From positions 448,572-512,571 of the IMG/VR virus record IMGVR_UViG_3300028654_000001: a stretch of 64,000 bases of DNA; one strand, 5' to 3'. The notes beneath the pieces are model-generated. The model saw only the letters and a list, made by a program, of their open reading frames with translations, did no database searches and had not been told where the DNA came from. The position numbers were made by a program, and so were the translations under genes. This document shows, in pieces, positions 11,978 through 56,547 of the stretch; within the stretch, counting starts at the first letter, position 1, and each line of letters begins with the position of its first letter.

Positions 11978-12166
11978 TTACGCCAAACCTCTACTCTTTA
12001 GCTTGAATATCACCTGCATGACAGCAGGGTCATCCTTGCTTGGTAACTTGATCTTGTGCAGGATCTTGTACTTACCACTAGAATCAGTGGTATCTTGACG
12101 TTCGTCACTAGGACTCGACTGGCCTCGCAGCCAAGAGTCATTCTTTGGGTCAAACTTAATGTTCAT
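11978..12166 (-). CDS. hypothetical protein
   Basis: ATGA-coupled to upstream ART gene. Confidence 0.5.
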   Translation of the reverse strand: MNIKFDPKNDSWLRGQSSPSDERQDTTDSSGKYKILHKIKLPSKDDPAVMQVIFKLKSRGLA

Positions 12167-13353
12167 ATAACCCGCCCCTCATGAGCCCCACCCACAACCA
12201 ATATTTCAGCCTCAGTCTCGAGCTCTGGGTGTGTGATATTTGACATCAAGACTTTTTCTACTGGGATCTTAAATTCAAGTGCGGTGCCAAAGGCGGATGC
12301 ACGAGAAGAATCGTAACTGAAAGACGAGATGGACCTTGTGTCCAAACTGGCTTCCTGCCCTTTTTTAGACTTCTCGAGCCCTTGACCTTGAACCCCTCTG
12401 AACAGAGTTAGCTCTTTGATCCCCAAGTGCTTGTAGTAGGCCTGAGAGAAGTCATAGGCATCTTGTAGGTACTTCTTGAGTTCTTTGCTTTTAGCCCCAT
12501 CCTCACGGAATCCCTTAGCTTCATCCTCATCCTCTTTTGGAGTACGAGATCCACTAACCCCCCAGGATTCAACCGCTCCAACCATATTCTGAACAGACTC
12601 TGAATCAGCAAAGTCTCCCGCGATCCTCCACCCAGCAACAGCACCCCTACCGACTTTTTGAGCCTCAGCATCCTTTTTCGACAGGTATTGCTGGAAGTAC
12701 TCGCCGAGTTTATCGCCACCAGCCCATAGAGCTTGTTCCTGAGGGCTGAGACGATCAAAGGCCTTCTTAAACTTGTTAGGATACTGATCCCCAGGAGATC
12801 TCTTCTTCATATGGGCACTCTTGAAGGACTTGACTGCCTTAGTCATCTCAGCAGTGATCCTATCAAAGTGCTCCTTGTTTTCTGCTATGATCGCATCAAG
12901 TTTTTTGGCATCAGGCTTAAATGGATTGGTTGATACCTCTTCGTCGGAGTCACCCTTTGGTTTTGCCTCTGAAACTGGTTCCTTAGTTTCAGGCTTTTTA
13001 TCATCCTGATCTTCAGGATCCTTTGACCTGCCACCAGAGGTGTCCTCTTCCTTCTGCTTGCCAAGCCACTCATAGTACTCTTTTATGGCCTTAGAGTAGA
13101 AGCTAGGGTTCTTCAAAGCAGTACTAAAGGAGACTTCCTTGTTCTTCTTACGAGAATCAGAATCGGAGCTCGGGTTGGGTACTCTTCGCTTACCACCCTC
13201 TTGAGTGGAATCTAACCACTCTTTCCACCTAGGAGGGATCTTACCCTTCTTTGAAGACTCTTCACCTTCCTCCTCACCAGTGCTAAACGCAAGCTTGGTT
13301 TGGGCTCGAGCGTATCGAGCGGCAACACGAAGGATCAGGGCAGCTTCTGACAC
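12163..13353 (-). CDS. putative ADP-ribosyltransferase (R-S-ExE type) with N-terminal RVAARY motif
   Basis: C-terminal LTLFRGV...SISSFS...ASAFG...ETEAEILV; acidic/basic linker. Confidence 0.7.
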   Translation of the reverse strand: MSEAALILRVAARYARAQTKLAFSTGEEEGEESSKKGKIPPRWKEWLDSTQEGGKRRVPNPSSDSDSRKKNKEVSFSTALKNPSFYSKAIKEYYEWLGKQKEEDTSGGRSKDPEDQDDKKPETKEPVSEAKPKGDSDEEVSTNPFKPDAKKLDAIIAENKEHFDRITAEMTKAVKSFKSAHMKKRSPGDQYPNKFKKAFDRLSPQEQALWAGGDKLGEYFQQYLSKKDAEAQKVGRGAVAGWRIAGDFADSESVQNMVGAVESWGVSGSRTPKEDEDEAKGFREDGAKSKELKKYLQDAYDFSQAYYKHLGIKELTLFRGVQGQGLEKSKKGQEASLDTRSISSFSYDSSRASAFGTALEFKIPVEKVLMSNITHPELETEAEILVVGGAHEGRVI

Positions 13354-13382
13354 ACAAGTTCAACCCTATAAGTCAATTAGAT

Positions 13383-13459
13383 TGGCACCCCCAGAAGAAC
13401 TCGAATCTTCAACCTCTGGCTTCGAAGGCCAACGCTCTATCCAATTGAGCTATAGGGGC
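13383..13459 (-). tRNA. tRNA-Arg(TCG)
   Basis: Loop CT-TCG-AA, A20, CCA. Confidence 0.95.
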
Positions 13460-13463
13460 ATGA

Positions 13464-13796
13464 CTAACGGGAACGATTACTACAGTGGATGCTACCACCG
13501 GCATTGGCATTCCCATGAATATCTTGACAGTTGACGCTACCACCCGCGCTAGCTGATCCCTGGATGTTCTCAGCATGAACACTCCCTCCAGCACTCACGT
13601 TACCCGCGACATCTCCACAAGTGACAGACCCGTCAGCACGAAGGTTGACGAGAGGGGCTTCCCAGTTGATGTTGACAACACCTTGAAGACCACCCTCTAC
13701 CACCACCCCATCGATAGAGACTACCCCGTCGATTACCGAAAGGTTGGAGCCAGAGGGGCTTTCTATACGCTTACCGTTGATTACAATTACAGGCAT
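13464..13796 (-). CDS. small beta-solenoid-like repeat protein
   Basis: Repeated (S/N)AGGS(V/I) units; GGTGTA promoter just upstream. Confidence 0.65.
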   Translation of the reverse strand: MPVIVINGKRIESPSGSNLSVIDGVVSIDGVVVEGGLQGVVNINWEAPLVNLRADGSVTCGDVAGNVSAGGSVHAENIQGSASAGGSVNCQDIHGNANAGGSIHCSNRSR

Positions 13797-13816
13797 AGCC
13801 AGTAATACACCGTAGT

Positions 13817-13893: not shown

Positions 13894-13895
13894 AT

Positions 13896-15185: not shown

Positions 15186-15210
15186 GCGATGTGATTACAC
15201 CTAAAAGATC

Positions 15211-16141: not shown

Positions 16142-16693
16142 TCAGATCTTCTTCTCGATCTCTTCCCACACCTCGAGTGCGGCCTGAGTCCTCTTCATAT
16201 CAGCTTCTGACTCAGGCCTAGGTATGCCATTGATCTCAAAGACAGCGGTAGCGGAGATCAATGCTTTGAGCAACTTGATTTTCTGCTTGGTGAAAGCCTT
16301 GAGAACCTTGAAGTCAGCTTTGGGGAAAGCTTCTACGAAGTCCAGGACATCCGTCTCGTCCGTGTACTCAGTGATGGCTGCCCAAGTCACATGCTCCTGA
16401 TTGTCCAAGTACATGCACGCGGCTATCATCACGTAGGTACTTGCCTTGGGCTTGTTCCACGTACCAGGACGAGCCTTCGGATTCATTGTCTGACTACAGA
16501 ATCGCCACCCTTTCTTTGGAGCATACTCGAGCCAGTAACGAATGGTTGTTCGAAGCTTGAACCCATAGGGGTAGTCATTGACGAAGTACCCATTCTCCTT
16601 GCTGTCGTAGCCATACAGGGGCTTGCCAAACTTGTTGGCAAGCTTGACTGTTTGCAGATACCCCTTTATGACCCGAGCAACTAGAAGATCCAT
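16142..16693 (-). CDS. hypothetical protein with N-terminal LVARVI motif
   Basis: DYPYGFKLRTTIRYWLE..WNKPKASTY; class-2 promoter upstream. Confidence 0.7.
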   Translation of the reverse strand: MDLLVARVIKGYLQTVKLANKFGKPLYGYDSKENGYFVNDYPYGFKLRTTIRYWLEYAPKKGWRFCSQTMNPKARPGTWNKPKASTYVMIAACMYLDNQEHVTWAAITEYTDETDVLDFVEAFPKADFKVLKAFTKQKIKLLKALISATAVFEINGIPRPESEADMKRTQAALEVWEEIEKKI

Positions 16694-16721
16694 ACCTGAT
16701 TGATTGAGATAAGAGGATTAG

Positions 16722-18372: not shown

Positions 18373-18861
18373 TTACTTACGAATCTTGGACATGAGCTTT
18401 CGACCCATGTTCATCATGTGCATACCTACAACCTCTGGATCAGCTACAATCTCTTTCAATTCAACTAGCTTTGAAAAGTCTGGCTTACCACTGATTGTGA
18501 ATGGTATGTATGACATGCTGATAGTTGTCATCTCTCCACGAATCCCTAGGTGCATCGCTATTGAGTCAACGGGTTGGGGTGGGGCAAAAAAGTAATAGAT
18601 CTCATGTAAACGCGCTGAAGCGTTCACTGAGTATTTATCCCCAAGAGTCTTCCGAAACAAGTTCAGCAAATTAGGTAGGAGTAAGTTTACGGACTCCTTA
18701 GCCAGAGCAAAAATAGGTTTATCACCAGAGGGGGCAAAAGCTAGCTTGTCCTGAAACCTAGAGAAAACCCAATCAGGGATTGGTGGGTTCCACCCTGACA
18801 TGGCTACCCGGAAGTTCCAGCTGGCGACAACTCTTCTAACTAGAGGATCCATTCTAGCCAA
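18373..18861 (-). CDS. hypothetical protein with N-terminal DPLVRRVVA motif
   Basis: 162-aa ORF; class-2 promoter. Confidence 0.65.
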   Translation of the reverse strand: MARMDPLVRRVVASWNFRVAMSGWNPPIPDWVFSRFQDKLAFAPSGDKPIFALAKESVNLLLPNLLNLFRKTLGDKYSVNASARLHEIYYFFAPPQPVDSIAMHLGIRGEMTTISMSYIPFTISGKPDFSKLVELKEIVADPEVVGMHMMNMGRKLMSKIRK

Positions 18862-18880
18862 GGAAGGCTATAGATAGTTC

Positions 18881-21558: not shown

Positions 21559-21849
21559 TTACCTATTAGGCTTACTCTTGAACTTTGCAGCAAGTCTTCG
21601 AGCTGCATCCAAGAAAGAATTATCGTTATTGTCTGAAGTCTCTGTTTTACCTTTACACTCTAATAGATAACCATCAGTAACTGAGGTGACTTTGGTTGGT
21701 CCAATAACGATTTGAAGTGCTTGCTTGGCCGCCTCCCGGATCCCCTTGCTCCGTCGAATAACCTCATACTCCTGATCGAACGTTGTCTCTAGGTTATGCT
21801 TAGCTGCAAACCTAGAGACAACGTTGGAGATACTAACCACGTCTTCCAT
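21559..21849 (-). CDS. hypothetical protein with NVVSRFAA motif
   Basis: Class-2 promoter CACTTATAGG 14 nt upstream. Confidence 0.6.
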   Translation of the reverse strand: MEDVVSISNVVSRFAAKHNLETTFDQEYEVIRRSKGIREAAKQALQIVIGPTKVTSVTDGYLLECKGKTETSDNNDNSFLDAARRLAAKFKSKPNR

Positions 21850-21892
21850 AACAAGGAAATCCTATAAGTGAGAAATTGACTGAACCATAAGT

Positions 21893-21992: not shown

Positions 21993-22862
21993 TCAGGGGT
22001 TGAGCCCAAGACGTTCTGGATGAGGTTCCCAAGAAGTTAGTTTACTGCTAACCAAAGCACGGACACTGGATACCTCTCGAATCTGAGCTTTTTCATGGCT
22101 TATAACCATCTCCCGGTAGCGTTCCCAATCTACAGGAGAGGTATCTTTTCTAGTGTAGGCCTTCAGGAATCCGATGACTAAAGTGTCTTCCTCATCTCGT
22201 TCAAGTCTGCCGAGTCGAACATTGAGATCCTTCAGAAAAGAGTCCAATTGGATGAGGTACTCTTTGGTTCCTTCAGCACTAAGCTCGAAAGGTGGCCACC
22301 CGTTACCGAAACACTCCCCTTGAAGGTACCCTGTCCCAGGACGTTTGTATCCGTGAAGAACGACCCCGGGCATTGACCGATCACCCTTCTTGGCTCTTGG
22401 AAGCAGCATGAAGGGTCTGAAACAACACGGACAGGTTGCCCTGCCAACTCGAGCCCTCTCCTCACGCTCTTGCTTCTTCCTCTCGGTCTCAGCTTCGTAG
22501 GACTCCATCTGCAGAGCTTCGAGTACTTGATCCTGGAAGTGATTCTTCGTCAACCACTTCTCTAGGGTCTCACCCTCAGCGTTTCGAATGATGAATAGGT
22601 ACTCCCTCCCGATGTAATCGAAGAAGACTCCAGTCTCGAATACAGCTCCGTTTGGGGCAGTGAACTTGGTTCCTCCCCTGAGGGGCTCGATTGTCCAACC
22701 AAGATAGTCGAAGACTGGCCATAGCTCCTTGAGTGTTTTCCCTAGCTTTGGATTCTTTCGAACCCAGAGTAAGAGCTTTGTCATCTTCTCTGGATCCAGA
22801 GGTCTCTTACGAGCAGCCGCTTGAAAACGACGGGCCACTCTCTGGACAATAGGATCTTCCAC
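21993..22862 (-). CDS. hypothetical protein with N-terminal DPIVQRVARRF motif
   Basis: TCPCCFR..VLHGYKRPGTGY..GECFG zinc module. Confidence 0.7.
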   Translation of the reverse strand: MEDPIVQRVARRFQAAARKRPLDPEKMTKLLLWVRKNPKLGKTLKELWPVFDYLGWTIEPLRGGTKFTAPNGAVFETGVFFDYIGREYLFIIRNAEGETLEKWLTKNHFQDQVLEALQMESYEAETERKKQEREERARVGRATCPCCFRPFMLLPRAKKGDRSMPGVVLHGYKRPGTGYLQGECFGNGWPPFELSAEGTKEYLIQLDSFLKDLNVRLGRLERDEEDTLVIGFLKAYTRKDTSPVDWERYREMVISHEKAQIREVSSVRALVSSKLTSWEPHPERLGLNP

Positions 22863-22900
22863 ACCAAGAAGTACCCTATAAGTGAAACTTGATCAAGTAG

Positions 22901-23865: not shown

Positions 23866-24636
23866 CTAAATCTCGAGATCATCTAAAAGAGACTCTAGGT
23901 CACCTTGGATGTACTCGAAGATCGACTGGTTGCCATCAAAGTACTTAGTCACACCCTGACCAACCTTGGTCTCTACTACATCAGTGCTAATCTCTTCAAA
24001 GTTAGATGGAAGTGCATCCTCCCACTCATCATAGTTAGTAGGAAGGTTGTGTATCCACTCCTTGAAGAAAGCGAAACTACCGTAATCATGGTCAGAAGGT
24101 GAGAAGTCTGGGATGTAGCTATGAACCTGATCCAGAGCCCTCTGTTGTTTAGAGAAGTCTAATGACTTCAACCAACTTAGATCCTCCTCTGTAGGAGCAT
24201 CCTCAGGGAATGACCCAATACGATCTATCAGATCGTTCCGATCAAAATCAACAAGTACTTTGGCTATAGGAGAATCATCAATATCACTGTAGATATCGTC
24301 AGCATTGAAGTCATATCGTTGAAGAAGAAGCCCGATTAGCTTAAGTTCTCGCTTGAGTTCTTTTTGTAGGTTGGGTAAGTCAGAGGGATCATCTATTAAA
24401 GACTTGAATCGATGAGTGTATTCCTTGTCTAACTTCTTCAACCTAGAATCAATGTCCAGGAGTTTTCTGGTCTTATCACTCAAGGGTTTCGAGTCGAACG
24501 CTTTACTCATGGTATCTAATAAAGAGAGAGGCCCCGATAGATTCCACTCCTTGAATGTATACCAAGCTAGATTGAGTCTTCGGACATCAACCGCAGCTTT
24601 ATACCTAGCAACCACCCGAGAAACTAGAGAACTCAT
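23866..24636 (-). CDS. acidic hypothetical protein with N-terminal LVSRVVARY motif
   Basis: 256-aa ORF; class-2-like promoter. Confidence 0.65.
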   Translation of the reverse strand: MSSLVSRVVARYKAAVDVRRLNLAWYTFKEWNLSGPLSLLDTMSKAFDSKPLSDKTRKLLDIDSRLKKLDKEYTHRFKSLIDDPSDLPNLQKELKRELKLIGLLLQRYDFNADDIYSDIDDSPIAKVLVDFDRNDLIDRIGSFPEDAPTEEDLSWLKSLDFSKQQRALDQVHSYIPDFSPSDHDYGSFAFFKEWIHNLPTNYDEWEDALPSNFEEISTDVVETKVGQGVTKYFDGNQSIFEYIQGDLESLLDDLEI

Positions 24637-29210: not shown

Positions 29211-29720
29211 CTATCGAATACTAGAACCAAGGAACCTGAACGCCACCCGTGTTTCAACAGAAGCCTCTTTGGCCTTCTGCACGAATTGACGCATCTTTCC
29301 CTTGAGGATATCTATGTCGTCTTGAGTAGCTGGACGTCCAAGTTGAGTACTCAGAGCCTTACTCCACTGTTGAACGAATGGATCCTTGGGGTCAGGCTTC
29401 GGAGCATCCTTGGGCTTCTTATCGAAGACTGGGGCATCTTTGGCCTTCTCCTTTTGGACAAACTGCTTCATCTGTCCTTTGAGAATGTCGATATCGGCCT
29501 CCGTTGCAGGCCTACCAAGATTATCACTAAGCGCCTTCTGCCACTGATTCTTAAAGTGGTCATCCTTGCCACCTTCAGACTTAGGAGCTGGAGGCTTACC
29601 CTTGTTCTCAACCACCCGGTGCTTGTGCTTGTCAGCTTTCGGGTGAGCTTTCAGATAGGTATCCAAAGCCTCTTGAGTTGGGAACTCCTTAGCAAGTTTG
29701 GTATCTTCCATAATGACCAC
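29211..29720 (-). CDS. repeat protein with EFPT..HPKAD module and C-terminal RVAFRF motif
   Basis: Two copies of QWxKALSxxLGRPATxxDIDILKGxMxQFVQK. Confidence 0.7.
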   Translation of the reverse strand: MVIMEDTKLAKEFPTQEALDTYLKAHPKADKHKHRVVENKGKPPAPKSEGGKDDHFKNQWQKALSDNLGRPATEADIDILKGQMKQFVQKEKAKDAPVFDKKPKDAPKPDPKDPFVQQWSKALSTQLGRPATQDDIDILKGKMRQFVQKAKEASVETRVAFRFLGSSIR

Positions 29721-32360: not shown

Positions 32361-32364
32361 TTCT

Positions 32365-32643
32365 ATGTCAAGTCTAACCATAATATCCAATGTTGTTAGA
32401 AGATATTCGAATAAGTCAAAGGATCAGGACGAGGATTACATACCATTCGGCCCTGTTGCACGTGGAAAACTGAACAATCAAGCTCAATATGCCAGGCACT
32501 GGTTAAAAGACCCTGAAGTGAATGATGGTATTCGATGGAGGGGTGACTTCTCTAATTACCATACCCTTGAGATTCACAGGGATGATGTAGAGGATCTAGT
32601 AAAACGAGTCAAAGATAAAGAGAAGGAACGAGGGATTAGGTAG
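32365..32643 (+). CDS. hypothetical protein with NVVRRY motif
   Basis: Co-oriented small ORF. Confidence 0.55.
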   Translation: MSSLTIISNVVRRYSNKSKDQDEDYIPFGPVARGKLNNQAQYARHWLKDPEVNDGIRWRGDFSNYHTLEIHRDDVEDLVKRVKDKEKERGIR

Positions 32644-34848: not shown

Positions 34849-34868
34849 AAGGTTGACTTACACCAGAG

Positions 34869-35696: not shown

Positions 35697-36851
35697 TCAA
35701 TTCAAGTGAGCGAGTACTTTGAGTACTCGCTTCGGAAGCCTCATCCTGCTAACAATCTCTTCTGCAGTAAGCCCTCGAGCGACAAGTGACAGGATCTCCT
35801 CATGCTTTGCAGCAATTAGGTCTTCTTTCCCGTTGAAAAAGAACCCTAGTGCTTCATGTAGGGCATACATATTCTCTTGGCGAGGCCCATAGTTGTCAAC
35901 CAGAGTGTCTTCCCAGGACTTGCCAGTATCCAAGTCCATACCTGGGAAGTGCTCCTTGTACTTCCGATCTCTAGTGCGGCACCAATTAGCGTAAATGTTG
36001 TGAACTGACCTAGCTAAGTACAACTTGAAGTAAGGTTTTGGTTGAAGCTTGAGAGGTTGGACACTTGGATTACTCTTGCAACGAGGGTTGGTGTCCCGCT
36101 CACTCTTGAGCCGTTCAACGTCAGCCGTGTGGTAAGTGGCCACTCTGGAGCCATAAGTACCGCTAGCTGGAGTCAAGCACGGGCGCTCAGGAGGGCTATT
36201 TACAATTAGCAGTTCCTCTGGAACACCTCCGAACACCTTCACCACACAAGATGGGCAGAACACCTTGTATCTGACCTTGAAGGTATCGCCTTTCTTAAAG
36301 GAGATGGTCTCATCTAGGCCGACGTAACAGAATACTCGGTGGTTGCTTGGAACCCACATCCTGGCCATGACCTTTGCGTACTTGGCTCTATCGGAATACA
36401 ACCAATGGTCATCGAGGACGTGTTGAAGTTTCTTAGTGCTGTTCCCGCAGCAGTGACAATCAGGACCATCTCTCAGGAGTACTTCGTCTTTTAGGGTAGG
36501 GGAGGCTTGTCTAAAATACCCATTACTCTTACTTCGCGGATCGCCGTTCATACCTCTAATCTGCATGTACTTGAAACCCTCCCAGGTCATACCCAGAAAG
36601 GAGCAAGTTTGATCCGTGGTCAGAACTTTAGGGATTGAACCTGTAGACGAATTATACTTTGTTATTAAATCTACCCTGAGTATCTCGAGCCAGACATGTT
36701 GGAGTAGGTCATCGAAGTTGGCCGACACACGATTGTAACGAGTTACCAAACGAGTCACAAACGGTGCATATGACTTGTAAAGATCATCCCCGTTCTTAGG
36801 CACATAGTCGTCAGGTAAGCCAAAAGTAGCCTGATTAGCAGAATTAACCAC
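35697..36851 (-). CDS. sigma-factor-like protein with internal HTH/Zn insertion
   Basis: LYKSYAPFV..FDDLLQHVWL..[~200 aa]..FKLYLARSVHNIYANWCR..LVARGLTAEEIVSRM. Confidence 0.65.
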   Translation of the reverse strand: MVNSANQATFGLPDDYVPKNGDDLYKSYAPFVTRLVTRYNRVSANFDDLLQHVWLEILRVDLITKYNSSTGSIPKVLTTDQTCSFLGMTWEGFKYMQIRGMNGDPRSKSNGYFRQASPTLKDEVLLRDGPDCHCCGNSTKKLQHVLDDHWLYSDRAKYAKVMARMWVPSNHRVFCYVGLDETISFKKGDTFKVRYKVFCPSCVVKVFGGVPEELLIVNSPPERPCLTPASGTYGSRVATYHTADVERLKSERDTNPRCKSNPSVQPLKLQPKPYFKLYLARSVHNIYANWCRTRDRKYKEHFPGMDLDTGKSWEDTLVDNYGPRQENMYALHEALGFFFNGKEDLIAAKHEEILSLVARGLTAEEIVSRMRLPKRVLKVLAHLN

Positions 36852-42395: not shown

Positions 42396-42740
42396 CTACT
42401 TAAGATCTGGAAAGATTGGTTCAACCTCTTGCATTGCTTCGTTCACTGCTCGTTCTTTCACATCCGCCCTCCACAACTTGAATAAGCCGAACGTCTTTGG
42501 TTGCTTTCTTCCTAGAGGGATTGGTTCAACCGTTACAGTGGGGTTTCCCCACTTATCCTGTCCAAAACCAAGAATCCGACCACGGTGATTCTTATACTTC
42601 CCGTAGAGAACAATATCCCCCGGTGAAAAGTAGCTAGCCCTAATGAATCGCTCAGCAACTCTTGAGATCAGAGTGCTTGTCTTCGATTCCTCAGCAAAAC
42701 TACTTGCTACTTTATGGACAAGGAGATCTTGGTCAGACAC
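42396..42740 (-). CDS. small SH3/KOW-like protein with KVASSF/RVAERF motifs
   Basis: FSPGDIVLYGKYKNHRGRI. Confidence 0.6.
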   Translation of the reverse strand: MSDQDLLVHKVASSFAEESKTSTLISRVAERFIRASYFSPGDIVLYGKYKNHRGRILGFGQDKWGNPTVTVEPIPLGRKQPKTFGLFKLWRADVKERAVNEAMQEVEPIFPDLK

Positions 42741-42827
42741 GGGGTTCCACTTCACTAGGGATTGGAATATTAGAAGCTTATTGATGCTCACCTATCAATA
42801 AACTTTTGACGGTCACCACCTATTAGG

Positions 42828-44222: not shown

Positions 44223-46045
44223 TGCGCACAATTGCAAGGGCCCCTGAGTGGGTTCTAGGAAGCAAACCTCCACTAAGTGGAGGTCATATGTGGGTTCCAC
44301 TTGGATCGACAGATCTAGTACCGCGCATCAATACCACTACTGGAATTATTGACAGCACAATTACAGTAGTAGGTGACCCTCAAGCAATAGTATGGGATGG
44401 GGGATCCTACATGTATGTGGCTGAAAAGGATAGTCAACTAGTCCAAAGAGTTAGTATCTTCAGATTAGCTATGGACACTACTACTAACATTGGGTCCCAT
44501 CCGGTTGAACTGGCTTGTGACGCCAACTTTGTGTATGCGGTTGGCGATGAGAACACACTCACCAGAATAAATATACTATCGGGGACCATCTTAGAGTCGG
44601 CTATCAATTTTAGTGGTAGTGATGGTGTCCCCAACAAAGTGGCCTGGGGCGGCAGCGATAGCATGTATGTCACTGCCAATAATATTAACCCAAACACGAA
44701 TAACCTCCTGAAAGTCTCGACGTCAAGCTGGCTTGACTTTTCTTCAATACGTTTACTGAACGCCCCCAACCCGTGGGGTGTTGCACGGGATGGATCAGAT
44801 CACATATACACAGCGAATTTTGGTCAAGGAACTGTCTCGAGGATCATTGCCTCCACTGGGGTCCTTGACCTGGTCATTCCTGTTGGTCAATCTCCAATTG
44901 ACCTTACATGGGATGGGGGTTCCTACATCTATGTAGTGGACCAGAGTGGGTCAGTTTACAGAATTCTGATCTCAACGGGAGTTGTTGACTCAATCATTCC
45001 TGTTGGAGAAAACTCATATAGGATCGCGTGGGATGGTGCAGATCATATGTATGTCACTAACAGTGGCACCAACACGGTATCACGTATCCTGATCTCTTCA
45101 GGAGCTGTTGATGCAACCATTAGTTTGGGTACCTCTAGCCCCTCAGGTATTGCATGGGATGGTGGTTCCTACATGTATGTTGCCTTTGAAAGCCCTGCAA
45201 ACATAGTCAAAAGGATTTTGATCTCTTCCGGTGCCGTAGTAGGTGGGTCTATCCCTGTGGGTAACGAACCAGTTGTTATTGCATGGGATGGTGGTTCCTA
45301 CATGTATGTTGTTAACCAAAATGACAACACAGTTACCAGGATAGCTATATCAGACTTGAGTACCACTACGATCATTAGTGCTGAAACCAACCCCTTCGGT
45401 GTTGCATGGGATGGTGGTTCCTACATGTATGTCGTTGGTCGTGGTGGGAATACTGCTCACCGGATTCAAGTATCGACGGGTTCTCTACTTGGCACTGCAA
45501 TAACACTTGGGAACTCTCCACGTGCTATCATGTGGGATGGTGGAACCCAGATGTTCGCTGTCAATAGTGTTGACGCTACAGTGTCCAGAATAGATATTAC
45601 CGGAACACCCTCAGTTGACATGACCATCCCGCTTCTCAACGACTTTGAGGGTGTTGCATGGGATGGCTCAGATCACATTTATGTGGTTAGTTCATTAACC
45701 AACCAAGTGATCAGAATCACATTGTTAGATAGTATTGATGCTAGGATCTCTGTAGGGAGTACTCCAAGGAAAGCCGCGTGGGATGGTGCAGATCATATGT
45801 ATATTACCAACTCAGGTGACGGAACCGTTTCACGTATACTAATCTCTTCAGGAGAGGTTGACGCCACTATCACTGTTGGGACAAGCCCAGATGAGATCGC
45901 ATGGGACGGAGCGGATCATATGTATGTGAACAACAGAGGTAGTAACAATGTTTCACGTATACTAATCTCCTCTGGAACGGTTGATGCCACTATTAGTGTG
46001 GCTGGTGTCCCGAGTGGCCTCGCATGGGATGGCCCTCTAAGGTAA
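44222..46045 (+). CDS. YVTN/YncE-like beta-propeller repeat protein
   Basis: ~14 repeats of P..IAWDG..YMYV.N....VSRI; consistent with two 7-bladed propellers. Confidence 0.85.
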   Translation: MRTIARAPEWVLGSKPPLSGGHMWVPLGSTDLVPRINTTTGIIDSTITVVGDPQAIVWDGGSYMYVAEKDSQLVQRVSIFRLAMDTTTNIGSHPVELACDANFVYAVGDENTLTRINILSGTILESAINFSGSDGVPNKVAWGGSDSMYVTANNINPNTNNLLKVSTSSWLDFSSIRLLNAPNPWGVARDGSDHIYTANFGQGTVSRIIASTGVLDLVIPVGQSPIDLTWDGGSYIYVVDQSGSVYRILISTGVVDSIIPVGENSYRIAWDGADHMYVTNSGTNTVSRILISSGAVDATISLGTSSPSGIAWDGGSYMYVAFESPANIVKRILISSGAVVGGSIPVGNEPVVIAWDGGSYMYVVNQNDNTVTRIAISDLSTTTIISAETNPFGVAWDGGSYMYVVGRGGNTAHRIQVSTGSLLGTAITLGNSPRAIMWDGGTQMFAVNSVDATVSRIDITGTPSVDMTIPLLNDFEGVAWDGSDHIYVVSSLTNQVIRITLLDSIDARISVGSTPRKAAWDGADHMYITNSGDGTVSRILISSGEVDATITVGTSPDEIAWDGADHMYVNNRGSNNVSRILISSGTVDATISVAGVPSGLAWDGPLR

Positions 46046-47261: not shown

Positions 47262-48911
47262 TTAGAGTTGAACTTGATTGATAGTCTCGATCCAGTGCCC
47301 ATTGCCTGTACCAGTGATGAACGCGTTCATCACTTTGAACACCTCATCGCTAAAACCCCCGATGTTGAGAACATCAACATTATCCTTCACTTGGGTGGTC
47401 GTGTGCGGGGTGATGTCAATGCAAACGAGCTTTGCATTCGGGTTACGGGTCTTGAGCTTCTCCCATTCGTCAGCCATTGAAGTCGGCTTCGGGCCTCGAC
47501 TCCCCCAGTAGGATTCATAGACCCTACCCATCCCGCCACCATGACTCCATGACTCATAATCGGAAACGAAGATCACAACATCTACCTTCCTATTATCTTT
47601 GTTCATCACCTGTAGAGGAGAGGCACAGTTCGTGGACCCACCGCCGACTGCCGCAAGAATCCCGGCGTTCTTCATGATGGTGTTGTTTGAGTTCAACTTC
47701 ACATCAGTCCGAACATCACCTTCGAACGGGTACACTTGAGCACGAGGATTCTTCCTCAGCAAGCAGGAAGAGATCAAAGCTGCCACATCGACACACATTA
47801 CGGTGGTTGTTGAGCCCTTTCGCTCACCCGTAACCGGGCTCCGCATTGACCCAGAGACGTCCGTGCAGATAGCTACCTCGAGACCCTCGAAGGCAGGAAC
47901 GTTAACCGTTGCCACCTCCATAGCTACCTCGAGAGCATGCTCAATCTCCTTGGGCATGTTGACCGGCTTCTCATCCTTGTGCCAGGTGCTACCCTCATTG
48001 ATGGCTTTGTAAGCCGTCATGATCTGGTATGGAAAGACATTCGCCTTCCTGATGAGATCCGTATGGTTTAGCTTCTCTACCACTAGCTTCACCATCTTGG
48101 GATCAGTGAAGACACCGTGACGAGCAAAGGTGTTGAGACTCCTGAAAGTCTGGAACCAAGAAGCCTTAGTAGCCACAGCTTTCCAGTCCTCCGGGCTTAA
48201 CTGGAGACCGAGCAGCATCTCGAAAGGTGCGTTCGGTATCTCACCTACCGGGGAAGCCTTGAAGGCCTCATACGAGGCAATCAGAGCTGGCACGGCCTCA
48301 CTCACAGTGAAGGGCAGACCTTCGAACTTACCCTCCTTCTTACCGATCAGGTAAGCATAGAGGGCAGACCTCTGAGCGGACGTCGGGGCTACCCGAGCCA
48401 TCTTTACGATATCACCCAGGGTCGGTTTATCACCAACTGACTGGAAGAAGATCTGCTCATCAGTCCTGGAATTAAACCAGGCCGTGACCATTCTCTTGAG
48501 CCGCTGAGCTGACAGATTATGCCGCCCAAAAGACCCAGACCGGATCATCTGCGCGAAGTTACGCAGCATCTTGCCATTATTGATGACCCTCGGGAACACC
48601 TGAGCACAGAGGTCAGGATCCCTAGCTGCTAGGTAGGAGACCAGGGCTGCCGGCATGTCCTTCATGAACCCACTCTCGCGGGCATAGACTGCCACCTTGG
48701 CCAGGAACAATGGATGTGCCTGACGTGCAAGGGTCAGAACCTGAGCCAACTGATCTTCGGCCTTCGTGTAATAAGTGTTGTTAAAACAACCAGTTACACT
48801 TAACTGTGCAAGAGCCGCTTCAGCTTCCATGCTGTAGGCCGCCGCCCCAGCATAGTTCACTACCGTCGCATCTTGGACAGACTTACGCCCTGCTTTCTTC
48901 GACGACTTCAT
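47262..48911 (-). CDS. Ro60/Rsr TROVE-domain RNA-binding protein
   Basis: LAQLSVTGCFNNTYY, AVYARESGFMKDMPA, GKMLRNF, VFPYQ, VWA DVSGSM, GGGSTNC, SDYESW, IGGFSD. Confidence 0.95.
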   Translation of the reverse strand: MKSSKKAGRKSVQDATVVNYAGAAAYSMEAEAALAQLSVTGCFNNTYYTKAEDQLAQVLTLARQAHPLFLAKVAVYARESGFMKDMPAALVSYLAARDPDLCAQVFPRVINNGKMLRNFAQMIRSGSFGRHNLSAQRLKRMVTAWFNSRTDEQIFFQSVGDKPTLGDIVKMARVAPTSAQRSALYAYLIGKKEGKFEGLPFTVSEAVPALIASYEAFKASPVGEIPNAPFEMLLGLQLSPEDWKAVATKASWFQTFRSLNTFARHGVFTDPKMVKLVVEKLNHTDLIRKANVFPYQIMTAYKAINEGSTWHKDEKPVNMPKEIEHALEVAMEVATVNVPAFEGLEVAICTDVSGSMRSPVTGERKGSTTTVMCVDVAALISSCLLRKNPRAQVYPFEGDVRTDVKLNSNNTIMKNAGILAAVGGGSTNCASPLQVMNKDNRKVDVVIFVSDYESWSHGGGMGRVYESYWGSRGPKPTSMADEWEKLKTRNPNAKLVCIDITPHTTTQVKDNVDVLNIGGFSDEVFKVMNAFITGTGNGHWIETINQVQL

Positions 48912-49093
48912 GATTATCTCTCCATTTCCACCGAAGTGGAACAAGTTGCCCCAATAATTGAGGACCGTCACTTATACACTACCTTTTGAGACGTGCAAGG
49001 TAAAATCGACAGGAACCTCAAAAAGGGTTATCCCACAATGTGGCCAAGTTATGAAAATTACTTGACTTTTTGAGACGCCCTTCGGTGTAGAGA

Positions 49094-50026: not shown

Positions 50027-50031
50027 GTTAG

Positions 50032-50103
50032 AGACCCCAGGGGGGTTCGAACCCCCGCATATGGAGTTAGAGTCCGGTGTTCTGCCAATTGAACTATGGG
50101 GTC
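50032..50103 (-). tRNA. amber suppressor-type tRNA(CTA)
   Basis: Acceptor GACCCCA/TGGGGTC, D and T arms canonical, loop CT-CTA-AC, only 3-bp anticodon stem. Confidence 0.75.
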
Positions 50104-52522: not shown

Positions 52523-53932
52523 TCATGGGATTCCTTCGGAATTTGAAGCTATGCCAAGTTTCCTATTTGGAGATACCTTGGTAGTAAGCTTCCGGCTCGG
52601 AGCTACGAGCTCGTCTGACAGCCTTCCAGAGGAACTGTCCCGGCGAAGCCGGTATCGCTCTCTCAAGAGGGCCTTCACTTCGGAGGGGTAATCATCGAGA
52701 CCAATCTGTTTGTCCTCGGAACGTCCGAGCAAATTGATCCCTCCAACCACATCCGCGTGTGAAATCCTGCCGCATCCACGGCATCGAAACCTTGTCCCAG
52801 ATCGGTTTGACCTGGAGATGTACCCACATGAGGGGCACATCTGTGATGAATAAGCTGGGTTTACTACAATTGTAGGAGCCTTCGTGCTTAATGAGTGATG
52901 CAAGGCCCGATAAGCAAATCTCTTTTGACCACTACAACCAGAAAGATTCAGATCCTCAATGACGAAAGCATGACCTGGATACTTAGTAACTAGTTTGTTA
53001 GCAACAGTACCCGTTGCTGTCTTGATCAAACCCGATAGTTGATCTTCGAGACGGTTCAACCTAGGAGAGTTCTCTTTGAAACCTTGTCGTTGTCGATTGG
53101 CTCGAAGAGCTCTTACTCTCGTATAGAGTTCATTAAACCTAGGCTTAATGGAAGCCCCATAAAGATCCCCTTTAGATGTAGCCGCTATTACATTGAGACC
53201 AATATCAACCCCAATCCTTGGCATCCCAGGATAAAATTTAGGCTCTTCGATGATCTTCTTCTCTAGGACCTCAACTCGCCAACGACCCCTTTTGTCCTTA
53301 CGGATGAGGCACCCGTTGACGATCTCTTCTGGGGACTTGATGTGAGGGTTAGCTACAATTGGAACCCAAACCCGATGATTTTTCTTGAGGTTTGAGAATC
53401 CAAGCCACCAGGGAGAGAGCCTTGTTTCATTGACCTTGATGTCGCTCGTATGGATCGACATCCGTATCCCGATTCGGTTCGAAGACGTAGGACTCTTCCC
53501 ACTTACCTTTGGATCAAGTAAAAGAGACCAATAGAGGTCAATGGCTTCTTGAGTGATTATATCTGTTGGCCGGTCTACGTTGTACTTCCCGATAGTGAAG
53601 AGTTGAAAGCGGATGGCCTCAATGATCTGATCTTCTTTGAAGAATTTCTTTATGTGCTTCTTGATTCTTCTGGTATACAGAGAAGTCGTCCAAGTTAGAA
53701 CTATTTCTACGGCGTGCTGTTGACAGGCCATCACGAGATTGGTTGAAAGAACCTTCTCGACTGGGAAGAAACGAAGGATCTCTCCGCGAGGGACACGCAT
53801 CCTCCTGGATTGAATCATCAAGTCAATACAGGATTGAAGATACCGACGATATTCGATATGAAGGGCTTCGAGAGCCTGGATTTTTTCTGAGTTGGTCTCA
53901 GGGTGAAAGTAGAGGACGCGGGAGCGCTTCAC
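52523..53932 (-). mobile_element. tnpB: TnpB (IS200/IS605-family RNA-guided nuclease), no TnpA
   Basis: RuvC-I IGVDIGLN, RuvC-II VIEDLN, AYSSQMCPSCG..FRCRGCG, RuvC-III HADVVGGINL. Confidence 0.9.
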
Positions 53933-53975
53933 ACTAAGTGTAATCGATAGAGAGGTTATTGGTGTACTTCACAAA

Positions 53976-54353: not shown

Positions 54354-54579
54354 AACGATCTCTACCACGGAGTTGGCGCTACTCTTTGCTAAGTATCGCC
54401 AGAATGTCAAAATTAGTTGCGACGATGAGCATGCTCACTCGGCTGTTGATGGGTGTTTGTCCCCCAAGGAAAATGTAGGGGCCGATGAAAGGGACGTGAC
54501 TATTTGTAAGCTCTGTGAGATCATACTCCGAGAGCGACGAATAGCCAAAGACCTTCTTTCTAAGATAACTGGTGATTGA
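54346..54579 (+). CDS. hypothetical protein
   Basis: Overlap-coupled ORF. Confidence 0.45.
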   Translation: MIETISTTELALLFAKYRQNVKISCDDEHAHSAVDGCLSPKENVGADERDVTICKLCEIILRERRIAKDLLSKITGD

Positions 54580-55060
54580 CACGGTAACAACCGACCAACC
54601 TTGGAAGGTGGCCAGCATTAGCGGTCATCGAGCTATCGGCCCGAACAGTAAGAAACGGGTCTGGGACGCGATCCAGATGTTGGTCAATAACAGTGCCATC
54701 AGAGCAATATACTTTGGCGGTGCTCGAGGAACTGACACTGAAGCCCTCAAAGCTGCCCTCTACTACCGAAAGGGAGTATACCCCCGATTGATTGTTGTCC
54801 TCCCTGACACTCTTGATCAGCAGCCGGTATCTACTCACCAGTGGACTCGTAGGGCCGATGAGTTGATTGAGTTAAGGCGAAAAATCAACCCAGAAGATGG
54901 TTACTTGAGCTATCGGAAACGAAACGAGTACATGGTAGATAACGGAACGTTCCTAGTAGCATTCTTCAATGGGAACTTCCAGTCAGGGACAGGACAGGCA
55001 ATCGACTACTCAAATAAATTGGGTAAGCCAGTCTACAAGATCAACATCTCTTCGGCTTAG
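54572..55060 (+). CDS. SLOG-superfamily (YspA/DprA-like) protein
   Basis: ISGHR, FGGARGTD, RNEYMVD, SGTGQAI. Confidence 0.8.
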   Translation: MIDTVTTDQPWKVASISGHRAIGPNSKKRVWDAIQMLVNNSAIRAIYFGGARGTDTEALKAALYYRKGVYPRLIVVLPDTLDQQPVSTHQWTRRADELIELRRKINPEDGYLSYRKRNEYMVDNGTFLVAFFNGNFQSGTGQAIDYSNKLGKPVYKINISSA

Positions 55061-55090
55061 TCTGAATCCTTTTATAGGTTCCACGAAGTT

Positions 55091-55993
55091 ATGGATCCCA
55101 TCCTACGCTCATTCCAAGATGCCGTGATTGTTCGTAATGTGGTGGCCAAGAGCCTCAAGGCCTTTGCTAAGTACCACCCCATCCTCACCACGGTGGAAAG
55201 AGCGGCTAAGATCATCGAGAAGAACTACCAGTCTGCACTAAGGTTCTCTGAAATTGCGTCAAAACATGATAGTGCATACCACGGAGACCGAAGCAAGATC
55301 CAGCCCAACATGGATAAGGCTATCAAGTCCATCGAACTTATCCTTAGTACAGCTGGGTCTATCGAGGAACCCGTGGTTGCATTTAGGGATGAGCTTCAAC
55401 ATACATCAGGATCTAACCTCAATGATCAACTCACCAAGTGGGTTACTTGGTTTGTTAGTTCACTCAAGGAAGCAAGGGGCGAAGACTTTAGGGCTATGCG
55501 CCCATCTAGTTTGAATGACTTTGCAGAACGTGAGTTAGGAACTCTCATAGGCTCTGTTAAGAATTTGAGTGTCATCGTTCGCATGACCTCCAAGGTTCAA
55601 GAAGCAGGACCAGAGTATGAAGACACAGCCTCTGATGCCGACAAGTTCAAGGCCTATCAAACAAGTCAAGTCACCTCAATGGCTAAATCTTGTGCGAAGA
55701 AGTTGGGCAACGAAGCTGCTCCATGTATCACCCTAGGTCTAGGGGTTTTAGAGGACGTCAACGCGGATTCAGCTCTCAGACTCCTCAATAATACCATCGG
55801 ACATTACGAGAAGACGGTTTCCGATGAGGATTTGAAACTACTCAGGCCCTTAGTTGGCAAGGTTTCAACAGCCATTGACTTTGGAGTTGTTGAAGCCGGA
55901 GCTTTTCTCTGCGCTATCATGCAGATTGTTAGAGCCCCTGAGACAAGTAGGGTATTTGCAGAGCTAACGAAGTACTATAGTGAGTACATGTAA
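55091..55993 (+). CDS. hypothetical protein with MDPILRSFQDAVIVRNVVA leader
   Basis: Shares promoter and N-terminus with 56029 gene. Confidence 0.65.
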   Translation: MDPILRSFQDAVIVRNVVAKSLKAFAKYHPILTTVERAAKIIEKNYQSALRFSEIASKHDSAYHGDRSKIQPNMDKAIKSIELILSTAGSIEEPVVAFRDELQHTSGSNLNDQLTKWVTWFVSSLKEARGEDFRAMRPSSLNDFAERELGTLIGSVKNLSVIVRMTSKVQEAGPEYEDTASDADKFKAYQTSQVTSMAKSCAKKLGNEAAPCITLGLGVLEDVNADSALRLLNNTIGHYEKTVSDEDLKLLRPLVGKVSTAIDFGVVEAGAFLCAIMQIVRAPETSRVFAELTKYYSEYM

Positions 55994-56028
55994 CTTACCC
56001 TGAATCCTTTTATGGGTCTAACTAAGTT

Positions 56029-56547
56029 ATGGATCCCCTCCTACGTTCATTTCAAGATGCCGTGATCGTCTGCAATGTGGTGGCTAGAACCAAAGCGGCT
56101 ACAGAGTTTCCGACTGAAGAAGCTCGGAAGAAGTACCTGCAGAAACACCCAAAGGCGGATCCTCGGAAGCATACTGTCAAGAAACAAGAGGGTGGAGGCG
56201 CGAAGAGTGAGCCTGAGAGCAAGGAGCCTGCTAAAAAAGAGGAGTCACAGGATCACGATCAGGGCCACGAAAAAGAACAGTTCAAGCCAACATCCTACCA
56301 TAAGGACTTAGGGGGTAATATGTCTCAATGGCATGGACCCGGAAGCCCTGCAATCTCTGAGGTAGCTTCTCACCTTATAGCTGGGAAGCCGTTTAAGAAG
56401 GAGAAGTTATTGGAGGCTGCTAAAGAACTTGAGGGCTTCCTTCCTGCTGCCAAAGCTGGAAAACATGGGTGGGGTAAAAGCGAGGTTAAAGAGTTGAACA
56501 AGATGATCTCTCACTTGAAAAACCTCCATACACCTCAGAAGCTCTAA
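56029..56547 (+). CDS. hypothetical protein with same leader and EFPT..HPKAD module
   Basis: Module shared with 29211-29720. Confidence 0.65.
   Translation: MDPLLRSFQDAVIVCNVVARTKAATEFPTEEARKKYLQKHPKADPRKHTVKKQEGGGAKSEPESKEPAKKEESQDHDQGHEKEQFKPTSYHKDLGGNMSQWHGPGSPAISEVASHLIAGKPFKKEKLLEAAKELEGFLPAAKAGKHGWGKSEVKELNKMISHLKNLHTPQKL

What the first reader, a model, noticed from the sequence alone, without database searches (positions are those of the whole stretch)
12163..56547. Shared N-terminal RV(A/V)xR(F/Y) motif on unrelated proteins, coupled to a second promoter class
Seen: ILRVAARY (12163), LVARVIKGY (16142), DPLVRRVVASW (18373), ISNVVSRF (21559), DPIVQRVARRF (21993), LVSRVVARY (23866), ISNVVRRY (32365), LRVARLL (34869), ISRVAERF (42396), IVRNVVAKS and IVCNVVART (55091, 56029), and C-terminal TRVAFRF (29211). 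The motif is often followed by K(L/F/A)A. Most of these genes lack an SD and have AAT-N4-(T/C)TAT, or a close variant, 13-15 nt before the start (e.g. AATCCTTTTAT, AATCCTCTTAT, AATTGACTTAT). Inference: a portable capsid-targeting or propeptide tag, analogous to the T4 capsid targeting sequence, on late-expressed cargo that is packaged and injected. The cargo would include an ADP-ribosyltransferase and a sigma-like factor.
Basis: partly seen in the sequence, partly recalled or inferred. Interest (0 to 1): 0.75.

Follow-up and report, generated by a model that had tools for sequence, protein, structure and literature searches.

The report
Portable terminal tag on huge-phage proteins
About 29 unrelated proteins of a 512-kb soil phage begin with the same ~15-residue peptide and often share a special upstream DNA element, which looks like an address label for late-made effector proteins, read either by the capsid or by the phage's own ClpX unfoldase.

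Summary
The window is the last 64 kb of a complete 512,571-bp phage genome from rhizosphere metagenomes.

- **The tag.** Genome-wide, 26-29 of about 674 proteins carry D-phi-x-phi-phi-x-R-V-[AV]-x-R-[FY]-x-x-A, almost always at residues 6-15. Conservation is at the protein level and holds across a family of 360-570 kb phages.
- **The upstream element.** TAA-N4-CTTATAG, 11-14 nt before the start codon, precedes 11/29 tagged and 24/645 untagged genes. Lack of an SD is genome-wide, not tag-specific.
- **The cargo.** Tagged proteins include a DRAT-like ADP-ribosyltransferase, topoisomerase IB (inside the head operon), zincin-like peptidases and a DnaJ protein. The sigma-like ORF is not tagged.
- **For capsid delivery.** In relatives the same proteins are fused into 1000-2800-aa polyvalent-type proteins, next to the portal gene in the one record read there.
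- **The rival.** The phage encodes a ClpX with its zinc-binding N-domain. That gene is flanked by tagged genes in most relatives, and the tag core resembles the ClpX-binding LRVV motif.

Function is unproven. I put capsid delivery at about 0.4 and a ClpX handle at about 0.3.

The parts
13294..13347 (-). N-terminal tag (EAALILRVAARYARAQTK) of ORF 12163-13353, a 396-aa DRAT-like ADP-ribosyltransferase
   Evidence: Pfam DRAT E 1.1e-10; homologs keep the tag plus an acidic linker
13366..13379 (-). upstream element TAATTGACTTATAG, 12 nt before the GTG start of ORF 12163-13353
16640..16693 (-). N-terminal tag (MDLLVARVIKGY..., weak member) of ORF 16142-16693, 183 aa, no family
16707..16720 (-). upstream element TAATCCTCTTATCT, 13 nt before the ATG
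18799..18852 (-). N-terminal tag (MDPLVRRVVASW, weak member) of ORF 18373-18861; real start probably ATG at 18852
18868..18879 (-). upstream element AACTATCTATAG, 15 nt before the ATG
21790..21843 (-). N-terminal tag (DVVSISNVVSRF) of ORF 21559-21849, 96 aa; its C-terminus also ends with a tag-like RRLAAKFKSK
21862..21877 (-). upstream element AATTTCTCACTTATAG, 12 nt before the ATG
22806..22859 (-). N-terminal tag (EDPIVQRVARRFQAAARK) of ORF 21993-22862, 289 aa
   Evidence: PHROG families of unknown function only
22876..22890 (-). upstream element AAGTTTCACTTATAG, 13 nt before the GTG
24583..24636 (-). N-terminal tag (MSSLVSRVVARYKAAVDV) of ORF 23866-24636, 256 aa; its upstream element is degenerate (TTTTCGTA)
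32371..32424 (+). N-terminal tag (SLTIISNVVRRY) of ORF 32344-32643; probable start ATG 32365
42627..42680 (-). second of two tandem tags (TSTLISRVAERFIRAS) in ORF 42396-42791; a first, degenerate copy (DLLVHKVASSF) lies about 23 residues upstream. This small domain is the module most often fused into relatives' polyproteins
55118..55171 (+). tag (DAVIVRNVVAKS) of ORF 55091-55993, 300 aa, after the leader MDPILRSFQ
55065..55077 (+). upstream element AATCCTTTTATAG, 13 nt before the ATG
56056..56109 (+). tag (DAVIVCNVVART) of ORF 56029-56547, 172 aa, N-terminal paralog of 55091
56003..56015 (+). upstream element AATCCTTTTATGG, 13 nt before the ATG
29214..29255 (-). candidate C-terminal copy (ETRVAFRFLGSSIR) at the end of ORF 29211-29720; weak
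   Evidence: C-terminal copies are common in relative G002
35697..36851 (-). sigma-70 region-2-only ORF; NOT tagged. It is one of three phage sigma-like genes and a candidate reader of one of the two upstream-element classes (inference)

Best explanation
The motif is a portable, roughly 15-residue peptide tag. It is probably a short amphipathic helix with core R-V-[A/V]-x-R-[F/Y], usually 5-9 residues after the initiator Met and followed by a flexible linker. It marks a set of about 29 accessory, effector-like proteins of a huge soil phage.

Shown:
- The tag is real, conserved as protein, and N-terminal.
- It is shared by unrelated domains.
- It is conserved across a family of 360-570 kb phages.
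- It is linked to its own upstream element, TAA-N4-CTTATAG, at a fixed 11-14 nt from the start codon.

Inferred:
- The element is a -10-type promoter read by host RNA polymerase with a phage sigma factor, probably late. This gives very short, SD-less leaders.
- The tag docks the proteins to one common receptor during head assembly. They are then enclosed in the procapsid and delivered with the DNA. This is the job done in related phages by fusing the same domains into one giant polyvalent protein, which lies next to the portal gene in the one record read there, and in T4 by the capsid targeting sequence.

Whether the tag is cut off afterwards is unknown.
For: - Enrichment and position.
- Protein-level conservation. 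More than 100 Topo IB homologs from 360-570 kb contigs keep N-terminal LRVAARY, and some carry two tandem copies. ART homologs keep the tag plus a linker.
- Tag-bearing proteins are unrelated enzymes and ORFans.
- The tagged Topo IB (G000:414860-415906) overlaps the stop of the large terminase gene. With a tagged 130-aa gene it lies inside the operon TerL - portal - protease - Q-rich scaffold-like protein - MCP.
- In relatives, 8 of the 29 tagged proteins (against 9 of 645 untagged) match segments of ORFs of 900 aa or more around Topo IB. One example is L058 = Topo IB + 738-aa zincin protein + Peptidase_Mx protein, all three tagged in this phage. Tag-like motifs sit at some of the module junctions.
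- Such polyvalent proteins, with ART and zincin domains, are predicted to be head-packaged and injected (PMC5512222).
- The element class also precedes two tail-fibre-like genes and a structural-region gene. The main GGTGTA class avoids the 320-440 kb structural region and all 29 tagged genes.
- Similar elements (CTTATGA-N12-ATG, CCTATAG-N12-ATG) precede tagged genes in relatives G001 and G002.
- The AF2 model shows the tag as a short helix of low confidence, detached from the Topo IB fold.
Against: - No virion proteomics exists for any relative, and none is cultured.
- No conserved protease site follows the tag.
- MCP, portal, protease and the scaffold-like protein do not carry the motif.
- Docking of a tag against MCP and the scaffold ends gave no answer.
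- A J-domain protein is an odd capsid cargo.
- The conserved linkage of tagged genes with the phage clpX gene is not explained by this model.
- 'Late' rests on a few relaxed element matches. No RNA run was listed, so no transcription start is known.
- Tag number varies widely among close relatives: about 29, about 11, and 0-10.
Confidence: 0.4

Rival explanations
1. The tag is a handle for the phage-encoded ClpX. It binds the zinc-binding N-domain (like the SspB XB tail or the UmuD N-terminal tether) and/or enters the pore as an N-terminal degron. Tagged proteins are then unfolded and, with host ClpP, degraded or remodelled. This would be a phage-private timer for potentially harmful effectors, or a set of adaptors.
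For: - G000 encodes a full ClpX (277071-279446, minus strand). Its zf-C4_ClpX domain scores E 2.4e-10, and the protein matches E. coli ClpX at E 5e-99. It keeps an MGF (IGF-like) loop, and an intein interrupts Walker A.
- The gene lies inside a run of seven tagged genes.
- Tagged genes, or homologs of tagged genes, flank clpX in G001 and G003-G005. A tag match lies within 3 kb of clpX in 9 of 12 further clpX-bearing records. The naive binomial P is 8e-7.
- The flanking families differ between genomes.
- G002 lacks clpX and lacks the canonical tag.
- The tag core L-R-V-[VA] matches the XB peptide RGGRPALRVVK, which binds the ClpX N-domain (PMC3983244) regardless of its position in the chain (PMC12373786).
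- Tags occur at N-termini, at C-termini, in tandem and internally, and are followed by flexible linkers, as in SspB.
Against: - The resemblance to XB covers only four residues, and XB binds as an extended strand whereas the tag is predicted helical (the XB binding mode is recalled from memory, not checked here).
- The linkage is partly inherited synteny, so the P value is inflated.
- The phage has no ClpP.
- G002 has no ClpX yet carries its own clear variant, RVA[ST]RY, on 16 ORFs.
- clpX uses the other (GGTGTA) element class, so tagged proteins made later would meet pre-existing ClpX. That seems wasteful for a pure degron.
- It does not explain why the tagged set equals the polyvalent-protein modules.
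Confidence: 0.3
2. The tag binds some other common partner. It could be a membrane-targeting amphipathic helix, a homo- or hetero-oligomerisation helix, a chaperone (Cpn60 or DnaK) handle, or a host hub protein.
For: - The pattern is amphipathic: hydrophobic at -3, -2, +1, +2, +5 and +8.
- It occurs at either terminus and in tandem, as known membrane-targeting sequences do.
- The phage encodes Cpn60 and a J-domain protein.
Against: - Val +1 is invariant (26/26), Arg +4 is in 24/26 and R/N at position 0 is in 22/26. This points to a specific protein pocket rather than to lipid binding.
- There is no hydrophobic h-region, so it is not a Sec or Tat signal.
- No genomic linkage to Cpn60 was seen.
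Confidence: 0.15
3. The tag is an artefact: chance, paralogy of whole proteins, or a DNA/RNA-level signal (downstream box, promoter-proximal element) that merely happens to be translated.
For: - 55091 and 56029 are N-terminal paralogs.
- 12163-13353 has a paralog at G000:274706-276049.
- The element and the tag lie close together.
Against: - Shuffle and position statistics.
- Synonymous codon variation.
- Different Pfam domains behind the tag.
- Conservation in genomes of 49-59% GC, at C-termini, and inside polyproteins far from any start codon.
Confidence: 0.02

Closest known systems
T4 capsid targeting sequence (CTS) of internal proteins IPI-III, and the Alt propeptide
   Same: - A short N-terminal peptide shared by otherwise unrelated, rapidly varying accessory proteins.
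- The cargo includes an ADP-ribosyltransferase.
- The genes have their own compact promoters.
- The proposed role is co-assembly into the prohead and injection.

(T4 facts are from established knowledge and PMC9026906/PMC5512222.)
   Different: - No sequence similarity to the T4 CTS as I recall it (memory, not tested).
- No recognisable protease site after the tag.
- About 29 carriers instead of a handful.
- The tag also occurs C-terminally, in tandem and internally.
- The head protease is not T4 gp21-like by the searches run (PHROG 18299 only).
- Packaging is untested.
Polyvalent proteins of phages and conjugative elements (Iyer et al. 2017, PMC5512222)
   Same: - In relatives the same domains (Topo IB, zincin peptidases, ART-like, PolyA_pol-type nucleotidyltransferase) are strung into ORFs of 1000-2800 aa; the one read in full lies next to the portal gene.
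- The domain repertoire and the genomic context match.
   Different: - In this genome the modules are separate genes, each with its own tag and often its own upstream element.
- No MuF domain was found.
- A tag at the module boundaries is not part of the published description.
ClpX N-domain ligands: SspB XB tail (RGGRPALRVVK), the UmuD N-terminal tether, and lambda O-type N-terminal degrons
   Same: - A terminal, linker-attached short peptide with an L-R-V-V/A core.
- It works at either end.
- The phage supplies a ClpX with the zinc-binding domain, encoded among tagged genes.
   Different: - The similarity covers only four residues.
- The tag has further invariant positions (Arg +4, aromatic +5, Ala +8) that XB lacks.
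- Binding is untested.
- A relative without ClpX (G002) keeps a variant tag.
T4-type late promoters (a -10-only element read by a region-2-only sigma, gp55)
   Same: - A short AT-rich element (CTTATAG) with no -35 partner.
- The phage has no RNA polymerase of its own but has three sigma-like genes, one with region 2 only.
   Different: - The sequence differs from TATAAATA.
- The spacing to the start codon is fixed at 11-14 nt.
- The transcription start and timing are unknown.

Membership tests
T4-type capsid targeting sequence | Short N-terminal peptide shared by unrelated proteins of one phage | tested here: met
   26-29 proteins; 24 have the core at residues 6-15
T4-type capsid targeting sequence | Carriers are found inside the capsid, and the tag is sufficient to load a foreign protein | not testable with these tools
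   No cultured relative and no proteome. Indirect only: head-operon location and homology to polyvalent-protein modules
T4-type capsid targeting sequence | Tag removed by the prohead protease at a consensus site | tested here: inconclusive
   Only R[FY]-x-[AQ]-A follows the core. No motif is shared with MCP, portal or the scaffold-like protein. Cleavage cannot be seen in sequence
T4-type capsid targeting sequence | Binds a scaffold or shell component | tested here: inconclusive
   Complex prediction of a tag against MCP and the scaffold-like ends scored 0.17: 'no answer'
Polyvalent proteins (Iyer 2017) | Two to 15 effector-type domains in one polypeptide, encoded with virion genes | tested here: not met
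   Not met in this genome, where the modules are separate genes. Met in relatives: L058, L079, L095, L041 and the G002 1798-aa ORF next to portal
Polyvalent proteins (Iyer 2017) | Typical domains: zincin metallopeptidase, ART, nucleic-acid enzymes | tested here: met
   DRAT-like ART, Topo IB, weak Peptidase_Mx/Zincin matches, and HExxH motifs in the 738-aa protein
ClpX N-domain-binding (XB-like) tag or ClpX degron | A ClpX with the zinc-binding N-domain is available | tested here: met
   PF06689 E 2.4e-10; ClpX E 5e-99. Present in 16 of the 25 related records searched
ClpX N-domain-binding (XB-like) tag or ClpX degron | Peptide resembles the known ligand LRVVK | tested here: inconclusive
   Core [LI]-R-V-[AV] is shared with RGGRPALRVVK: four residues only
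ClpX N-domain-binding (XB-like) tag or ClpX degron | Physical binding, and ClpXP-dependent turnover | not testable with these tools
The phage has no ClpP
ClpX N-domain-binding (XB-like) tag or ClpX degron | Tag and receptor co-occur across genomes | tested here: inconclusive
   More tags in clpX-bearing records (MWU P 0.011) and adjacency in most. But clpX-less G002 has a variant tag, and the records are related or incomplete
Twin-arginine (Tat) or Sec signal peptide | RRxFLK followed by a hydrophobic h-region and a cleavage site | tested here: not met
   Most tags have A-A-R or x-x-R rather than RR. The next 22 residues are Lys-rich, not hydrophobic
Sigma-dependent -10-only (T4-late-like) promoter | Conserved short element at a fixed distance upstream of a mapped transcription start | not testable with these tools
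   The element and its spacing to the start codon are shown. No RNA run was listed

The most novel reading that the evidence does not exclude
The tag is the address label of a ClpX-assisted protein-loading pathway. The phage's own ClpX grips the tag through its zinc-binding domain. It then unfolds or hands over late-made effector modules so that they can be enclosed in the procapsid and ejected. In lineages without ClpX, the same end is reached by fusing the modules into one polyvalent protein next to the portal gene. This would tie together the tag, its promoter class, the clpX linkage and the polyprotein homology. It would also give a mechanism for the speculation that jumbo-phage ClpX/ClpA act as translocases in virion assembly (PMC7824862).
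Probability: 0.12. Interest if true: 0.9.

Novelty: new variant of a known kind. Interest (0 to 1): 0.72.

Why it matters
Huge phages carry hundreds of unexplained accessory genes. A sequence label that picks out a coherent subset (about 4% of the proteome here) gives three things:

- It gives a way to predict which proteins share a fate, whether injected effectors or ClpX clients, in uncultured phages.
- It offers a compact tag that could be tested for loading foreign proteins into large capsids, or for targeted unfolding.
- It ties together three features that are usually studied apart: split versus fused polyvalent proteins, a phage-encoded ClpX, and a dedicated promoter class.

Two literature searches on capsid targeting and huge or jumbo phages found no description of this motif.

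Tried and rejected
- Megablast of 10 kb of the window against GenBank phages: no match. A protein search found only one unannotated uncultured 485-kb record.
- Alternative genetic codes: the standard code fits best.
- PHROG scans gave nothing for most tagged proteins; Pfam and PHROG scans of the head-module neighbours beyond MCP, protease, portal and terminase, and of the G000 homologs of G002's tagged proteins, found only endonuclease families.
- My iterated DNA PSSM for the upstream element drifted into non-genic hits. I fell back on simple patterns with a spacing requirement.
- Complex prediction (tag + MCP + scaffold-like ends): no answer.
- T7-like and multisubunit phage RNA polymerases: none found. 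The T7-promoter-like look of CACTTATAGG is therefore probably coincidental.
- ClpP: none.
- RNA-seq: no run was listed, only DNA runs from rhizosphere and soil metagenomes.
- ESM Atlas look-up of the 130-aa head-module tagged protein: nothing usable.
- A PDB search with the ZBD alone found nothing. The whole ClpX protein did match.
- Tat/Sec signal, membrane helix and a DNA-level artefact were considered and set aside (see rivals).
- Neher et al. 2003 (the UmuD tether) could not be read. That comparison rests on memory.

Full report
**Setting.** The window is the last 64 kb (448572-512571) of a single-contig, 512,571-bp viral record with direct terminal repeats, rated 100% complete. It has 49% GC and uses the standard genetic code. 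The DNA is held in rhizosphere and soil metagenome runs. The window holds 42 tRNA genes, a tmRNA and a CTA-anticodon tRNA. It also encodes Cpn60, Ro60/TROVE-vWA, TnpB, a DNA pol III delta'-like protein and a sigma-70 region-2 ORF. This is a 'huge phage'. GenBank phages hold no close DNA relative, and a protein search found only one distant, unannotated uncultured phage.

There were 17 hits against 1.9 in shuffled proteins. Twelve lay within the first 20 residues against 0.24 expected (binomial P 1e-9).
- A PSSM iterated on the genome splits the proteome cleanly: 26 proteins score above 25 bits and everything else scores 10 bits or less. Three weaker members were added by eye.
- The logo is D(-6), L/I(-3), I/V(-2), R/N(0), V(+1, 26/26), A/V(+2), R(+4, 24/26), Y/F/V(+5), A(+8). 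This is an amphipathic pattern.
- In 20 of the 26 proteins the core starts at residue 6-10.
LRVARLL (34869) is not, and the C-terminal copy at 29211 is weak.
- The codons differ at synonymous positions, so the conservation is at the protein level.

**What carries the tag.** Pfam finds the following:
- topoisomerase IB (G000:414860-415906);
- a DRAT-like ADP-ribosyltransferase (window 12163-13353);
- a J-domain protein;
- weak zincin/Peptidase_Mx matches.

A 738-aa tagged protein shows two HExxH motifs. Most of the rest have no family in Pfam or PHROGs. The sigma-like ORF 35697-36851 is not tagged.

**Upstream elements.**
- Tagged genes are enriched for TAA-N4-CTTATAG(G), which ends 11-14 nt before the start codon. 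[CT]TTAT lies in -26..-8 of 11/29 tagged against 24/645 untagged genes (P 2.6e-8).
- The dominant element of the genome is different: YYYGGTGTA, ending 9-12 nt before ATG, on 79 genes. It precedes none of the 29 tagged genes.
- SD-like words are uncommon everywhere.
- The phage has neither a T7-like nor a multisubunit RNA polymerase, but it has three sigma-like genes. The two elements are therefore probably -10-type promoters read by host polymerase with different sigma factors, giving very short or no leaders. This is inference. No RNA run was listed, so starts and timing cannot be checked.
- Three hints suggest the TTATAG class is late. Relaxed matches precede two tail-fibre-like paralogs. 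One precedes a gene in the structural region. The GGTGTA class is almost absent from 320-440 kb, where the head genes lie.
- CTTATGA-N12-ATG and CCTATAG-N12-ATG precede tagged genes in two relatives.

**Conservation.**
- More than 100 metagenomic Topo IB homologs, many from 360-570 kb contigs, keep the N-terminal LRVAARY. Some have two tandem copies, or an extra domain inserted behind the tag.
- ART homologs keep the tag, an acidic linker and the catalytic domain.
- An AF2 model of the Topo IB shows the tag as a short helix (residues 7-13) of low confidence ahead of the fold.

**Link to the capsid.**
- The head module reads TerL (415906-417894), tagged Topo IB, four small genes, portal (410943-412766), three genes, protease (406716-408386), a Q-rich acidic scaffold-like protein, a 210-aa protein and MCP (403571-404440). 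A tagged 130-aa gene lies just upstream of the putative small terminase. Two tagged genes are therefore co-oriented with, and overlap, head genes.
- I fetched eighty loci around Topo IB from related viral contigs. They show Topo IB embedded in ORFs of 1000-2800 aa.
- BLAST of these giant ORFs against this phage's proteome hits 17 proteins, 8 of them tagged.
- L058 is simply Topo IB + the 738-aa zincin protein + the Peptidase_Mx protein, three separate tagged genes here, with tag-like motifs still at the start and ahead of the last module.
- In G002 a 1798-aa ORF next to the portal gene contains a nucleotidyltransferase-type module, the small domain of window ORF 42396-42791 with its RVANRY, and Topo IB.
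- This is the architecture and context of 'polyvalent proteins', which are predicted to be head-packaged and injected (PMC5512222).
- The untagged 366-aa gene just downstream of the portal gene is the usual C-terminal partner of Topo IB in those fusions.

**The unexpected rival.**
- A search for ClpX parts found a zf-C4_ClpX domain (E 2.4e-10) at the start of a 791-aa ORF, G000:277071-279446.
- It is a complete ClpX (E 5e-99 to E. coli ClpX). A PI-SceI-type intein sits in Walker A, and an MGF loop occupies the place of IGF. The phage has no ClpP.
- This gene sits in the middle of the densest run of tagged genes, seven between 273096 and 281715.
- In relatives G003 and G005 clpX is flanked by tagged genes of other families. 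In G001 and G004 it is flanked by homologs of this phage's tagged genes.
- In 9 of 12 further clpX-bearing records a tag match lies within 3 kb of clpX. The naive P is 8e-7, but it is inflated by shared ancestry.
- The SspB tail that binds the ClpX N-domain is RGGRPALRVVK (PMC3983244), and it works wherever it sits in a chain (PMC12373786). The tag core is [LI]-R-V-[AV].
- G002, which has no clpX, has no canonical tag.
- Against this, G002 has its own sharp variant, RVA[ST]RY, on 16 ORFs, eight of them at the C-terminus. So a receptor other than phage ClpX must exist there.
- In addition, clpX belongs to the GGTGTA class, and the XB likeness covers only four residues.

**Weighing.**
- I hold it as shown that this is a portable, protein-level terminal tag with its own upstream-element class, conserved in a phage family.
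- Its receptor is not shown.
- Capsid delivery explains the head-operon members, the effector repertoire, the equivalence with polyvalent modules and the probable late class. I put it at about 0.4.
- A ClpX handle for degradation or remodelling explains the clpX linkage and the motif resemblance. I put it at about 0.3.
- A combined model, ClpX-assisted loading, is possible at about 0.12 within the first figure. It echoes a published speculation about jumbo-phage ClpX (PMC7824862).
- Other partners come to about 0.15, and an artefact to about 0.02.

**Novelty.** Two literature searches on capsid targeting and huge or jumbo phages found no description of the motif. As a class it is closest to the T4 capsid targeting sequence and to ClpX N-domain ligands. 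It differs from both in sequence, in the number of carriers, and in its link to split versus fused polyvalent proteins. I therefore rate it a new variant of a known kind, of high interest because it can be tested directly.

Noticed in passing
window 9364-31022 and 50031-50103: There are 42 tRNA genes, a tmRNA (9364-9710) and a CTA-anticodon (amber-suppressor type, called tRNA-Pyl by ARAGORN) tRNA, all on the minus strand. Small tagged and untagged genes are interleaved between the tRNAs, each with its own upstream element. The standard code still fits the genome best.
   Followed up: partly
window 39770-39775, 53961-53966, 34859-34864, 15196-15201 and others; 79 genes genome-wide: The main upstream element is YYYGGTGTA(nT), ending 9-12 nt before the start codon, with no SD and no -35 partner. 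If TGTAnT is a -10 hexamer, transcription would begin at or next to the ATG, giving leaderless mRNAs. The element is nearly absent from the 320-440 kb structural region.
   Followed up: partly
outside the window: G000:C1:277071-279446 (locus L023:9072-11447, minus strand): The phage encodes a ClpX with a zinc-binding N-domain. A PI-SceI-type intein splits the Walker A motif (GPSG|C...HN|TGKT). The genome has no ClpP, and the phage also encodes a tmRNA.
   Followed up: yes
loci L037, L061, L079, L090, L091, L101, L103: In relatives the large terminase and the head protease ORFs are interrupted by long inserts. These inserts are homologous to stand-alone G000 genes 303557-306655 and 433254-435350, which suggests inteins or other mobile inserts in essential head genes.
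   Followed up: no
window 29211-29720 and 56029-56547; locus L097: A second short shared motif, EFPT-x-EA-x3-YL-x2-HPKAD-x2-KH-x-V, occurs near the N-termini of two otherwise different window proteins. A short stretch of a relative's polyprotein (L097, residues 1155-1183) is 65% identical to the part of the 56029 protein that holds it. Only two copies occur in this genome.
   Followed up: partly
window 55091-55171 and 56029-56109: The two adjacent tagged genes share a near-identical 27-residue N-terminus (MDP[IL]LRSFQDAVIV[RC]NVVA...) and the same upstream element, but they diverge afterwards. This looks like duplication of a promoter-leader-tag cassette in front of different bodies.
   Followed up: no
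window 47262-48971, 52523-53932 and 44222-46045: These ORFs are a Ro60/TROVE-vWA protein, a TnpB/Cas12f-like ORF and a beta-propeller protein. No search for a partner Y-RNA or omega-RNA was made.
   Followed up: no
outside the window: G000:C1:403571-404440 compared with 414860-415906: The major capsid protein is 85-96% identical among relatives whose Topo IB is only 49-61% identical and whose GC ranges from 49 to 59%. The shell is unusually constrained.
   Followed up: no
outside the window: G000:C1:255886-256089: One of the three sigma-like genes lies directly downstream of a tagged Peptidase_Mx-like gene (256165-257607).
   Followed up: no
outside the window: G000:C1:413273-414905: Three small paralogous genes (172, 175 and 193 aa, sharing an R[SD]RDC...GD N-terminal block) and a 167-aa gene lie between the tagged Topo IB and the portal gene. 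Their function is unknown.
   Followed up: no
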